A stretch of DNA of 64,000 nucleotides, from the NCBI GenBank assembly GCA_965637545.1, contig OZ281501.1, forward strand, positions 2,356,001 to 2,420,000, written 5' to 3'. Origin of the DNA: Phallusia mammillata. Its lineage: Eukaryota. Within the stretch, counting starts at the first letter, position 1; each line of letters starts with the position of its first letter. Below, one piece after another: positions 47,941 to 63,898 of the stretch. The position numbers were made by a program, and so were the translations under genes. The notes below the pieces were generated by a model that saw only the letters and a program-made list of their open reading frames with translations, made no database searches and was not told the DNA's origin.

Positions 47941-50592
47941 TTAATGTGTAATCTCATACGGGGAACTTTCTACAGTCATGTTAGGTTGAATATTCTCGTA
48001 TTGACTCTTATTGGTTGATCGGTTCCTTGCAAGATGTTGTTTATCTTGAAGTCTGAAAAAATCACAGATGAACTTTAATTTAGCTCGTTAGTTGTTTTGT
48101 TTACAATTATTTTTGGAAATACGTATTTAGGTTCACGCGGGGTTTTCTATGTTACTGTTTTCAAAGGATTATTTCAAACATTGGAATTTGAACTTGCAAA
48201 TACAGCACACTACATATCGCACTATATAAAATATATTTGTGGTAAACCTCGGGTAGCCTATTCCAGACCCATTTCGACCAAAACATTGGTCCGGATTAGC
48301 CATAAAGATCCGGATTAACCGATGTCGGTTAGTTCAAGCCTTACCACATTTCAAATCGTTTGTACCTCAAGTTTGTTTAAATTATACGAAAATTCGGATT
48401 AACTGAATCCAGTTTAACTGAGGTTTACTGCATTACAATACCCAATAATAGAAAGTAGGTGTTGTTAAGTCTGTAGATGATATTAATTACCTGTTTGTAG
48501 AAACTGTTTCCTCATTAGAATAAATGTGATTTGTGTTTTGATTTGTTGCTTTATCTGATAAAAAAAACACATACGTTTCTTATCAAATTAAATTTAAACT
48601 TCAAAACAAATCAAACCTTGACTTTTGTTTCCATGACAACGCTGCTTTGCCATTACAATTGCCAGAGTCATGGCAATAACGCTGACACAGCATAATAGCA
48701 CAGCAAGTGCGATGACCGATTGAGAATTGTTCTCAGATGTGTTAACTCCATCAATAATAATTGATTTGTTGCACTGATGATTGTTATTAGTATTATTAGA
48801 CAGTTCTCTGACACCAATAACCCACACATGCACTTTGAAAGTCTCGTTAAACGGTTTCGGTGATTTTATAACCACAGAATATTCGCCCAAGTGTGTCTTG
48901 GTGACCTGTTTTGAAACATAAAGCTGGTTATTGATGCTTTTTGTAAAAAGAAATCAATTTTTTGAAAAACTTACGTTTGTAAAATGCATTAAGACTTTGT
49001 TTTTAATTCCATCAGTCAGATAGTAAATGTTGTTAATTTGTTTACCTGGAAACATAGTAATTGTTAATATGTGTCCTACAAAAAACCATTAATAGCCCAC
49101 TTCTTGTCCCATTAGGTTATTTGTTCGGAGTAAATGCGAAGTTGTACCTTGTTTAAAACCGGTAATTGCATCTGACCCAGACAATGCGGGGTTTGACTGA
49201 AAAGTTATTTCAACAAAATTTTGCTGATACAAGGTCACGTTGTAATACATGAAGCTGTTGTTTCGAACTTGAGGTGGGACTGTGAGATAGAAATCAAAGA
49301 AACATATAATACGATGTTTATGTGAAAGTTTTCAAAACGGCCCACATACATTGGACGTTGAGTTTAATTGATTTTGTTTCCACCTGTTGTTTGTCACGTG
49401 ATGTTTGTTGACACGTCACGAGGCTATTGTGGTGTGATGACGTCACAGTGATATTTGCCCACGCAAACTAAACGCATCAAATGATTGTCACACCATAGTA
49501 CTTAGGTTTGTTTTCTAAGACAACTAGATACCTCGTCCCCAAAGTAAGTTATATTTTTGGATGTCATCAATACATTTGTCATATCGGAGTTAAAGAGATC
49601 ACAAAACAACAAAACGTTTGAGTATTGCCTGAATGTTTGATTGTAAGCAGGGTTGTTCAAATCCACAAAGTTGCCTAAAAAATAATTTAAGACATAAACA
49701 CAACCACAAACATTAGGTAACCTTGTTTTACCTTTATAACATTTTAAGTCGGGTTCGTTCCATTGTGCAAACCTGTTGCAAAATATTTTTTCTCTGCGTC
49801 GTTTTGCTGTGGAATTTTCCATAAATACCGAGTTGTTGCATTGCACAGTGGCTGTGCTGAGAAAACTTCGACCGTTTGATACATAATGCAAATTTGTCGA
49901 GTGTGGACAATCTGTGGACAAATGTTGCACAAATAGGATTAAATCATACTCATGTTTTTTAAATCATACTCATGTCATCAGAAAGTTTACTAACTTACAT
50001 TTAAACGAGAGTATAGGAGTTGGGTGAAATAACAACGACTCCCCAAAAATGTTTTTTACTGTGAAGTTGATAGCATATCCATCGTATGCTGATGCATTAG
50101 TCAATACAAATTTTGCAACAATAGAGTTTGATGATTGGATTGATTGAAAGACAAAAGGTGGGTTGTGATCAACCTTTGAAAGACTGTTTTCGAAAATGAC
50201 ATACCAAGTCACAAAGTTGGACTTGTTGTTATACATGTTTAAGGAAATGACCGAATAACTGCCTGGTTCGTAGTTTGTAAACGAAAGATTAAAACTAATA
50301 TTTGAGACACCAACTGCCCACTGGAAGGATGGATTGGCAAAATGCATTGAAACTTTGCGAGCGTCAGCCCCTAAAATAAAGTAGTCTCATGAAAGCATCA
50401 CACTTTTGTCACAAAACTTGTTTTGAAAACATTTTAGCCAATTTGTTTTGCCATTTGCCAGTTTTTTTAAAAAAACTTATTTACAATATAGTGCACACAA
50501 ACAAAATAAATGTGTCATTTCTTACCGCATATTTTGTAATTCTGCAAAACCAAAAATGCTACGATAACCAAAAGGCCTTGATAACGACCCAT
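47941..50592 (-). CDS. Ig/CCP type-I membrane receptor, copy 1 (apparently intact)
   Basis: Signal exon MGRYQGLLVIVAFLVLQNYKIC (ATG 50592); V-like exon 50370-49999; CCP exon (CPH...C...FC...WNEPDLKC); two exons for a Cys-containing Ig; three exons for an I-set-like domain (FQSNP...FTNVTKTHLGEYSV) with stalk and TM VIALAVLLCCVSVIAMTLAIVMA; tail exons with HIYSN and SQYENI...SPYEITH*. All junctions are in phase. Confidence 0.85.
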
Positions 50593-51673
50593 ATTGCAGA
50601 ATAGACTTCACCACACAACAATGCACAATTGATATGCTGTAAATATAATGAACTGCTTGTTTTGCATTGAACTGGAGGTGAACAAACCACCTCCACATAT
50701 TGCAGCTACACATATTATCGAAATAGAAAGATGCGTTAGTTTCTTATCGACATTGTAGTACGTCGTTACTATGTGTCTCTCGTGGCTGTTGGCTTGTTAT
50801 GTCGCTATTTTAAAACAAACAATTCGTCTTTGCTTACCTATTCAGATTGTATACTACGACTTACTTACAGCTTCTTGTTTTATAGTTTACATCTGTACAG
50901 TTCACCACTTCTTGACACCTGTGACAAGCCTCGCCAATCGATTGAATTATTCGTTTTTGATTTGGACCAAAAGGTGTGTACTTGTTTTTATTTGTGTTGG
51001 TTGGTACTAAACTTACGACATAGTTAGCAGTAAGGCACTAAAACATAAAATTACCAAAACCTCGTAGATCTCAAAGTGTCCCAAATGCCTTTATATGAGA
51101 ACGGTTGACAATTTACTTTGGTCCGAATTCACTTAAATTTCACTTTCTAAACTGCCAATCGGGCACTTATATTTAGCGGATGTGTTTGTAGGCTAAATGT
51201 TATTTTTATTTTAGAAAAAATGTTTGAACAAAAGCATGAGGAATCAACACCTGGCATATAAAAAAACACATTTCCATGAAAAAAGTCTCGCATATAGAAC
51301 ACAAAAGTTTTCGTTTAAACAATAGCAACAACATAGAATGATACACACTGACAACGTTCAATCGTTTAGGATCGTAGGGGTTTGAAATTAGGTCAAGGGT
51401 CGTTAAACAACGATTCGTAACAAACTAATTATCGGAACGCGCAAACGCACAACATAAAGCAGACTGAATACAACTACTATCACTCCTTAGAGAAACCAAT
51501 TGCGATTAAAAATGTTTCACAGTATAATTTGGCTACATTACTAATACACCATGTTATGTCATGTTGTGTCATGGTAAAAGTTTGATAGTTTGCTTGTACC
51601 TGAAACCTGTAAGCAAAGTGATGTTTGTCTTAAACTGGTTCGTAGAGCAAATAAGTTTCTCTCATGATTCGAA

Positions 51674-63301: not shown

Positions 63302-63554
63302 AGTGCAGAATACGACTTCACTTCGCAACACTTCAAAACTAATAAGCTGTAAGTCTAATGTAGAGATTTGTTTTCTAAGTAAACCACCTCCACCTATTGC
63401 ACGTACACATCTTGGCGAAACAGAAAGTTGTACGTCAATCGACACATCAATTTCCTATCGACATTGCAATATGTCATCACAATGTAGACCCAGTTATAAA
63501 CCGCTGTGTGAAAAATATAACTTTTAAATGATATGCGCGCTAACATAACTTTTG

Positions 63555-63898
63555 AATGTACCAACGCCGTTCTGGTACATAGTTTGTAAAAGACAGATTA
63601 AAACTAATGTTTGAGACACCAACTGCCCACTGGAAGGATGGATTGGCAAACTGCACTGAAAAGTTGCGAAGGTCAACGCCTGAAATAACGTAATTTCATG
63701 AAATTATCACACTTTTGTCACAAAACTTGTTTTGGAAACATTTTAGCCAATTTGTTTTGCCATTTGCCAGTTTAACAAAAACTTATGTACAATAAAGTGC
63801 ACACAAACAAAATAAATATAAAATTTCTTACCGCATGTATTGTAATTCTGCAAAACCAAAAAAATCACGATGAATAATAAGACTTGATAACAACGCAT
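63555..63898 (-). pseudogene. Ig/CCP receptor copy 5, truncated (signal exon plus first third of V exon)
   Basis: MRCYQVLLFIVIFLVLQNYNTC|GVDLRNFSVQFANPSFQWAVGVSNISFNLSFTNYVPERRW, after which the sequence switches abruptly to the upstream region of copy 4. Confidence 0.8.

What the first reader, a model, noticed from the sequence alone, without database searches (positions are those of the whole stretch)
47941..63898. Tandem array of V-Ig/CCP/Ig/Ig receptors with tyrosine-motif tails: candidate immune or allorecognition receptor cluster
Seen: four full-length units plus one truncated unit, spaced about 3.7-4.6 kb, all on the minus strand, each with 10 coding exons: signal peptide, Cys-less V-like Ig, CCP/sushi, Cys-containing Ig, Cys-less I-set-like Ig, stalk, TM and tail, with many N-glycosylation sequons. 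Established: invertebrate recognition proteins are built from these parts (Hydractinia Alr1/Alr2 use variable Ig domains and Tyr-motif tails; Botryllus fester carries a sushi domain). I do not recognise this exact V-CCP-Ig-Ig order from any named family. Inference: a lineage-specific expanded receptor family for self/non-self or pathogen recognition. The array probably continues past the right edge.
Basis: partly seen in the sequence, partly recalled or inferred. Interest (0 to 1): 0.85.

Follow-up and report, generated by a model that had tools for sequence, protein, structure and literature searches.

The report
Decaying FcoR-like Ig-sushi receptor array
A probable sea-squirt genome carries a real, fast-changing row of genes for sugar-coated surface receptors laid out like the self-recognition co-receptors (FcoR) of the colonial sea squirt Botryllus, but only two copies are intact and neither kinship, expression nor function is shown.

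Summary
The array is real: four ten-exon units on the minus strand plus a fragment. Only A (518 aa) and D (515 aa) are intact. B is a pseudogene (stop, three frameshifts), C has one frameshift that short-read contigs confirm, and E is cut by an internal deletion, not by the window edge. Domain 1 folds as a Cys-less V-set Ig (Z 10.7 to antibody V domains), domain 2 is a sushi domain (Atlas 0.96); domains 3 and 4 are Ig by motif only. Variation sits on the GFCC'C'' face of the V domain; the rest is under purifying selection, and dN/dS never exceeds 1. The 68-residue tail has one YxxI motif (SQYENI, relaxed ITIM) and two YxN motifs. The order Ig-sushi-Ig-Ig-TM-Tyr tail is that of Botryllus FcoR (PMC12582321), so it is not unnamed; sequence kinship could not be tested. 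No sense transcript was seen, but two RNA-type runs hold a spliced antisense transcript across unit C. The scan has already noted look-alike clusters on other pieces of this genome. Most likely an innate recognition receptor family evolving by birth and death.

The parts
60288..63301 (-). Unit A, intact, 518 aa. Exons 63301-63235 (signal peptide), 63084-62713 (V-set Ig), 62613-62425 (sushi), 62361-62219 and 62159-62042 (Ig with one Cys pair), 61970-61839, 61710-61640 and start of 61568-61280 (Cys-less Ig, then stalk and TM), 61212-61149 and 60399-60288 (tail). Lacks its own copy of the conserved upstream block.
55758..58715 (-). Unit B, pseudogene: in-frame stop near 58107 and +1 near 58005 (exon 2), -5 near 57621 (exon 3), -7 near 57330 (exon 4); exons 5-10 still open
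   Evidence: lesions not checked against reads
51674..54314 (-). Unit C, one -1 frameshift in the sushi exon near 53573, otherwise open; stalk 20 residues longer; putative 5' non-coding donor changed from GT to AT at 54920
   Evidence: frameshift matched by error-free contigs 53537-53814 in runs X1 and X2
47941..50592 (-). Unit D, intact, 515 aa. Exons 50592-50526, 50370-49999 (V-set Ig), 49911-49732 (sushi), 49674-49532, 49467-49350, 49279-49148, 49045-48975, 48905-48617, 48554-48491, 48052-47941
63572..63898 (-). Fragment E: exon 1 and the first ~110 nt of exon 2, closest to D (87%), fused by a deletion to the upstream intron of A
50771..51100 (-). Conserved upstream block of D (copies near 54855-55100 before C and 59333-59620 before B) ending in a donor-like site (50837, 59398); likely promoter and non-coding first exon, with an acceptor about 45 nt before each ATG (inference)
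50886..53005 (+). Spliced antisense transcript: exons 50886-50973, 51718-51806, 52856-at least 53005, GT-AG on the plus strand, no mismatches; a further ~167 nt at its 5' end lie on nothing in 47930-53900
   Evidence: runs X6 and X12, two studies, guessed to be RNA
47743..47952 (.). About 200 bp of the 3' flank of D inverted relative to A, B and C, starting right after the stop codon

Best explanation
A birth-and-death cluster of FcoR-like type I membrane receptors for innate recognition, probably on blood cells or epithelia of a sea squirt. Shown: the gene layout, the V-set fold at the tip, the sushi domain, a single uncharged TM, a tyrosine tail, variation focused on one face of the V domain, purifying selection elsewhere, and loss of copies. 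Inferred: the V domain binds a variable ligand (a self marker or a microbial surface) with its GFCC'C'' face, each paralogue with a different specificity; sushi, two further Ig domains and the glycosylated stalk hold it away from the membrane; clustering lets Src/Syk-family kinases phosphorylate the tail, where SQYENI and IYSNE recruit SH2 proteins. Both are pY-x-N, the Grb2-type consensus (own knowledge), and SQYENI also fits the relaxed ITIM, so adaptor-type or weakly inhibitory signalling are both open; I lean to adaptor/inhibitory, not DAP12-type activation, because the TM has no charged residue.
For: V-set fold: VIA-align Z 10.7, rmsd 2.6 A over 114 residues to antibody V domains, all top 50 rows but one V-type; Foldseek agrees; nine-plus strands with C' and C''. 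Sushi: Atlas 0.96, 25 of 30 hits Sushi. V domain 61-64% identical between paralogues against 84-88% for exons 4-7, 9, 10, and 95% for the A/D tail; dN/dS 0.34-0.41 outside V. Variable columns 32 of 49 on strands C, C', C'', F, G against 13 of 51 on A, B, D, E (Fisher p = 1e-4, three sequences, strands from a pLDDT-64 model). Pseudogenes, a deletion fragment, an inversion and at least one copy not in the window. Same domain order, similar length (515-518 against 520-610 aa) and a YxxI core motif as Botryllus FcoR, which also occur as an FcoR-only cluster. Allogeneic contact reactions of haemocytes are reported for solitary ascidians (PMC5465252).
Against: No sense transcript in the two RNA-type runs laid (small runs of unknown tissue, contigs show presence only). 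dN/dS stays below 1 even on the variable face (0.72-0.86), because dS is raised there too, so positive selection is not shown. No strict ITIM, hemITAM, ITAM or core-2 motif. No partner gene head-to-head in the window. No ligand, no tissue data. Domains 3 and 4 unconfirmed. Species taken from other notes, not checked by me.
Confidence: 0.58

Rival explanations
1. Adhesion or junction receptors (nectin/JAM/CEACAM/nephrin-like) whose V domains vary to give homophilic codes or because microbes use them as docking sites; the tyrosine tail links to Grb2/Nck-type adaptors and the cytoskeleton.
For: The GFCC'C'' face is also the adhesion face of these families (own knowledge); YxN motifs and no strict ITIM; heavy glycosylation.
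Against: No conserved orthologue in 1.8 billion representatives; rapid gene death and copy turnover; the sushi insertion matches FcoR rather than these families.
Confidence: 0.2
2. Gamete or self-sterility recognition proteins on sperm or the egg coat.
For: Variable tip on a glycosylated stalk; blocks to selfing are reported in several phlebobranchs (PMC7344649).
Against: Known ascidian self-sterility proteins (Themis, HrVC70; own knowledge) have other domains; a paralogue array suits a repertoire rather than a haplotype pair; no gonad data.
Confidence: 0.08
3. This particular cluster is a silent, decaying offshoot: the family works from other loci, and these copies are no longer expressed, perhaps held down by the antisense transcript.
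For: Three of five units broken; A has lost its upstream block; D has an inverted 3' flank; only antisense RNA seen.
Against: A and D keep open frames over ten exons with dN/dS about 0.2-0.3 in sushi, Ig3 and tail; the RNA runs are small and of unknown stage.
Confidence: 0.14

Closest known systems
Botryllus schlosseri fester co-receptors, FcoR (PMC12582321; PMC12065747)
   Same: Signal peptide, V-type Ig, sushi, two Ig, one TM, tyrosine tail; 515-518 aa against 520-610; first Ig in one exon (FcoR: one or three); YxxI core-1 motif; tandem cluster with copy turnover; FcoR-only cluster exists on Botryllus chr 9; variable stalk in exon 8 recalls the exon-8 stalk deletion of FcoR33 (suggestive only).
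   Different: Paralogues here are 61-95% identical, FcoR average 32%; only one YxxI motif and no strict ITIM, hemITAM or core-2, where FcoR tails over 60 aa have two or more motifs; no head-to-head fester-family partner in the window; reported so far only in botryllids in the papers read; no sequence comparison possible.
Botryllus fester family (FF)
   Same: N-terminal V-like Ig followed by sushi; polymorphism concentrated in the Ig domain.
   Different: FF have three TM segments, no further Ig domains and no tyrosine motifs.
Hydractinia Alr proteins (PMC9546547)
   Same: Cys-less V-set domain missed by Pfam but found by structure; clustered family with pseudogenes; ITIM by the relaxed definition [ILVS]xYxx[IVL], which SQYENI meets.
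   Different: Alr have V, I-set and an Fn3-like domain, no sushi (0 mentions).
Vertebrate paired-receptor clusters (KIR/LILR, SIRP, CD300, Siglec, teleost NITR/NILT)
   Same: Tandem IgSF genes, variable distal V face, conserved tails, birth-and-death (own knowledge).
   Different: No sushi domain in those; no activating partner with a charged TM residue seen here; no sequence homology found.

Membership tests
FcoR | Type I membrane protein: signal peptide, one TM, cytoplasmic tail | tested here: met
   Hydropathy peaks at the N-terminus and at 426-447; 68-residue tail
FcoR | First domain V-type Ig | tested here: met
   Model pLDDT 64; Z 10.7 to antibody V domains, C' and C'' strands
FcoR | Second domain sushi | tested here: met
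   Four Cys and Trp pattern; Atlas 0.96. Pfam, PDB sequence search and a low-confidence model gave nothing
FcoR | Third and fourth domains non-V Ig | tested here: inconclusive
   Cys pair 42 residues apart, C2-like E-F pattern, LNVQF-PP linker, SNP and LGEY motifs by eye; exon-wise searches negative; joined domains not searched or folded
FcoR | At least one core-1 (YxxI/L/V) or core-2 motif | tested here: met
   YENI in A-D
FcoR | Two or more of the paper's tyrosine motifs in tails longer than 60 aa | tested here: not met
   Only YENI fits; YSNE and YEIT do not; no strict ITIM, hemITAM or core-2
FcoR | Head-to-head pairing with a fester-family gene (chr 5 and 11 type) | tested here: inconclusive
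   All units head-to-tail, no partner between them; the 5' side of E lies outside the window; Botryllus chr 9 FcoR are unpaired too
FcoR | Sequence or phylogenetic kinship with Botryllus FcoR | not testable with these tools
   No FcoR sequences held; no homologue returned
FcoR | Genotype-specific expression at the site of allorecognition; linkage to a fusion locus | not testable with these tools
   No sense RNA in two runs; no fuhc-type gene recognised nearby
Fester family | Three TM segments, no tyrosine motifs | tested here: not met
   One TM, three Tyr
Hydractinia Alr | V, I-set, Fn3-like order without sushi | tested here: not met
   Sushi is second domain
ITIM receptors | ITIM consensus in the tail | tested here: inconclusive
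   Meets [ILVS]xYxx[ILV], fails [ILV]xYxx[ILV]
   Only repeat-summed chance hits among 1.8 billion representatives; exon queries are short, so sensitivity is limited

The most novel reading that the evidence does not exclude
These genes are true FcoR homologues in a solitary, non-fusing ascidian (Phallusia mammillata by other notes). Then the Ig-sushi-Ig-Ig receptor family is older than coloniality and the phlebobranch-stolidobranch split, Botryllus fusion was built from a general tunicate innate receptor system, and the two YxN motifs with a membrane-proximal Cys would let the receptor carry its own LAT-like adaptor sites in a lineage reported to lack LAT; the antisense transcript could set which copy is used.
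Probability: 0.3. Interest if true: 0.72.

Novelty: new variant of a known kind. Interest (0 to 1): 0.45.

Why it matters
The Botryllus paper states that invertebrate allorecognition genes have no obvious homologues outside their family clades. Receptors of the same unusual layout in a different, probably solitary sea squirt would make the origin of that system testable: did fusion receptors come from an older haemocyte recognition family? The close paralogues here also give a small natural panel that maps the likely binding face. The value is reduced because the layout is already named, the scan has noted the same kind of cluster several times in this genome, and nothing here shows expression or kinship.

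Tried and rejected
Pfam on ten exons: nothing. Word-based protein searches with exon 2, exon 3-intron-exon 4 and exon 8: none; these see only proteins of 53-220 aa, so they say nothing about full-length kin. Representatives search: six hits, all repeat-summed chance matches. Metagenome scan: none. Atlas on the V exon: no recognition; Atlas fold search: generic beta-sandwiches and ICOS. Sushi model pLDDT 44, not used. Exon profiles against PDB sequences and two fish Ig proteins: nothing. Positive selection: rejected as unproven, dN-dS interval below or spanning zero. Assembly error as cause of the C frameshift: rejected, though the runs may be from the assembled animal. RNA contigs as proof of expression: rejected, they are spliced on the opposite strand. 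Species: no paper found to confirm it. As the operators asked, spliced models were searched exon by exon by reference; the joined proteins were built only inside scripts to check frames and motifs, and were neither searched nor folded.

Full report
Observation. Self-comparison of the window shows four long repeats between 47.9 and 63.4 kb at 77-80% identity plus a shorter one at 63.6-64.0 kb. Splice-site anchors give ten coding exons in each of four units, all GT-AG, with the same phases and short introns. The window has no N and about 36% GC.

Which units are intact. A (63301-60288) and D (50592-47941) give open frames of 518 and 515 aa. B has an in-frame stop and a +1 in exon 2, -5 in exon 3 and -7 in exon 4. 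C has a single -1 in exon 3. That site lies in an A-run, so an assembly slip was possible, but contigs from two public runs match 53537-53814 without a difference; those runs may come from the assembled animal, so this shows the lesion is in the DNA, not how common it is. The same runs hold a contig of similar depth with the missing base present and an exon-2 end unlike C; it has neither the insertion of A nor the deletion of B, so at least one further copy or allele exists outside the window. E is not cut by the window edge: its exon 2 stops matching at 63572 and continues into sequence like the upstream intron of the other units. So a deletion removed most of E and the conserved upstream block of A; if A is expressed it must use E's promoter beyond 64000 (inference). 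The 200 bp after D's stop codon are inverted.

Domains. Pfam sees nothing in the exons. The exon-2 model (three sequences, pLDDT 64) has the strand order of a V domain and matches antibody, TCR, CD8, CD28 and PD-1 V domains: Z 10.7, rmsd 2.6 A, 114 residues, 7% identity. It has no cysteine, like the Hydractinia Alr V domains that Pfam also mostly misses (PMC9546547). Exon 3 has four cysteines and scores 0.96 to Sushi clusters. There is one TM without charged residues, a Cys four residues inside it, 15-18 extracellular sequons and a 68-residue tail.

Evolution. V domains are 61-64% identical; exons 4-7, 9 and 10 are 84-88%, and the A/D tail 95%. dN/dS is 0.34-0.41 outside V, so the genes have been under purifying selection. 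Within V, 32 of 49 columns on strands C, C', C'', F and G vary against 13 of 51 on A, B, D and E (p = 1e-4). That is the face used for ligand binding in CD2-, CEACAM-, SIRP- and PD-1-type receptors (own knowledge). dN there is 0.55, three times the dS of the conserved exons, but local dS is also high (0.64-0.76) and dN/dS is 0.72-0.86 (that split was chosen after seeing the alignment). Older divergence through segment exchange, relaxed constraint or positive selection could each give this; three sequences cannot separate them.

Tail. Three tyrosines are kept in all four units: IYSNE, SQYENI and PYEIT. Only SQYENI is YxxI; it fits the relaxed ITIM but not the strict one. There is no ITAM, hemITAM or core-2 motif. 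Two of the three are YxN, the Grb2 SH2 consensus also found in LAT (own knowledge); the Botryllus paper notes that LAT is missing from ascidian genomes.

Expression. No run on record as RNA holds the stretch. Two guessed-RNA runs from two studies each hold a contig built from 50886-50973, 51718-51806 and 52856 onward with no mismatch. The joints are GT-AG on the plus strand, and one donor is unique to unit C, so this is a spliced antisense transcript from this locus, covering the upstream block of D and exons 10 and 6 of C. No sense-spliced contig was seen. The runs are small and their tissue is unknown, so silence is not shown.

Comparison. PMC12582321 describes the Botryllus fester co-receptors as type I proteins with signal sequence, Ig, sushi, two Ig, one TM and tyrosine motifs, 520-610 aa (PMC12065747), mostly paired head-to-head with fester-family genes but also in an FcoR-only cluster, evolving by birth and death. 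Differences: one core motif rather than two or more, close rather than distant paralogues, no partner seen. The papers do not mention Ciona, Phallusia or solitary species. No FcoR sequence was available, and no homologue came back from any library, so it works like, and is built like, an FcoR, but I do not file it as a member.

Organism and earlier notes. The run names are coded. Other notes of this scan call the genome a sea squirt, some naming Phallusia mammillata; I could not check the species. Those notes report FcoR-like clusters on other pieces of the same genome, one with tail-less partners, so the scan has found this kind of locus before. I found the FcoR paper by my own search in the same turn and checked its features myself.

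Verdict. Real, half decayed, known in layout, new in place and tail. Most likely an innate recognition receptor family (0.58); rivals are adhesion (0.20), silent relic (0.14) and gamete recognition (0.08). Interest 0.45; 0.72 if kinship with FcoR in a solitary species is shown (probability 0.3).

Noticed in passing
window 50886-53005 (+): Spliced antisense transcript across unit C and the upstream block of D in two studies; its first ~167 nt come from outside 47930-53900 and could not be placed.
   Followed up: partly
window 63572: Deletion joint fusing exon 2 of E to the upstream intron of A; exon 1 of E and exon 2 of A are both phase 1, so A could be made from E's promoter and leader.
   Followed up: partly
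window 47743-47952: Inversion of about 200 bp directly after the stop codon of D; D lacks the AATAAA found downstream of A and C.
   Followed up: partly
window 48304-48374, 51954-52125 (copies near 56080-56130, 60580-60650): Short high-copy repeat in intron 9, depth hundreds of times the flanks in DNA runs; looks like a MITE remnant.
   Followed up: no
window 52410-52500: Stalk of C is 20 residues longer through a short internal duplication; stalk length differs between all units.
   Followed up: partly
window 57310-57445: Exon 4 of B is only 76-77% identical to A, C and D, which are 92-94% alike there, while its other exons are not outliers: possible segment exchange with a copy elsewhere.
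   Followed up: no
window 9062-9412 (-): Exon with a strong DUF4663 (C11orf42-like) match, E 4.5e-27.
   Followed up: no
window 8205-8414 (-): Frame resembling the C-terminus of a hAT-type transposase by eye; no Pfam hit.
   Followed up: no
window 36738-37779: Tandem duplication of about 520 bp at 78% identity with no long open frame.
   Followed up: partly
window 5508-5582 (-), 32384-32433, 42573-42620, 59183-59230: tRNA-Asn call by ARAGORN and short tRNA-like repeats, one with a 32-nt A tail between units A and B; probably SINE-type elements.
   Followed up: no
window 20434-21257 (-): Coding-looking exons, one with a PPPPY motif; no Pfam assignment.
   Followed up: no
window 60650-60990 and 58150-58600: Unit-specific insertions in intron 9 of A (with an AT microsatellite) and intron 1 of B.
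   Followed up: no
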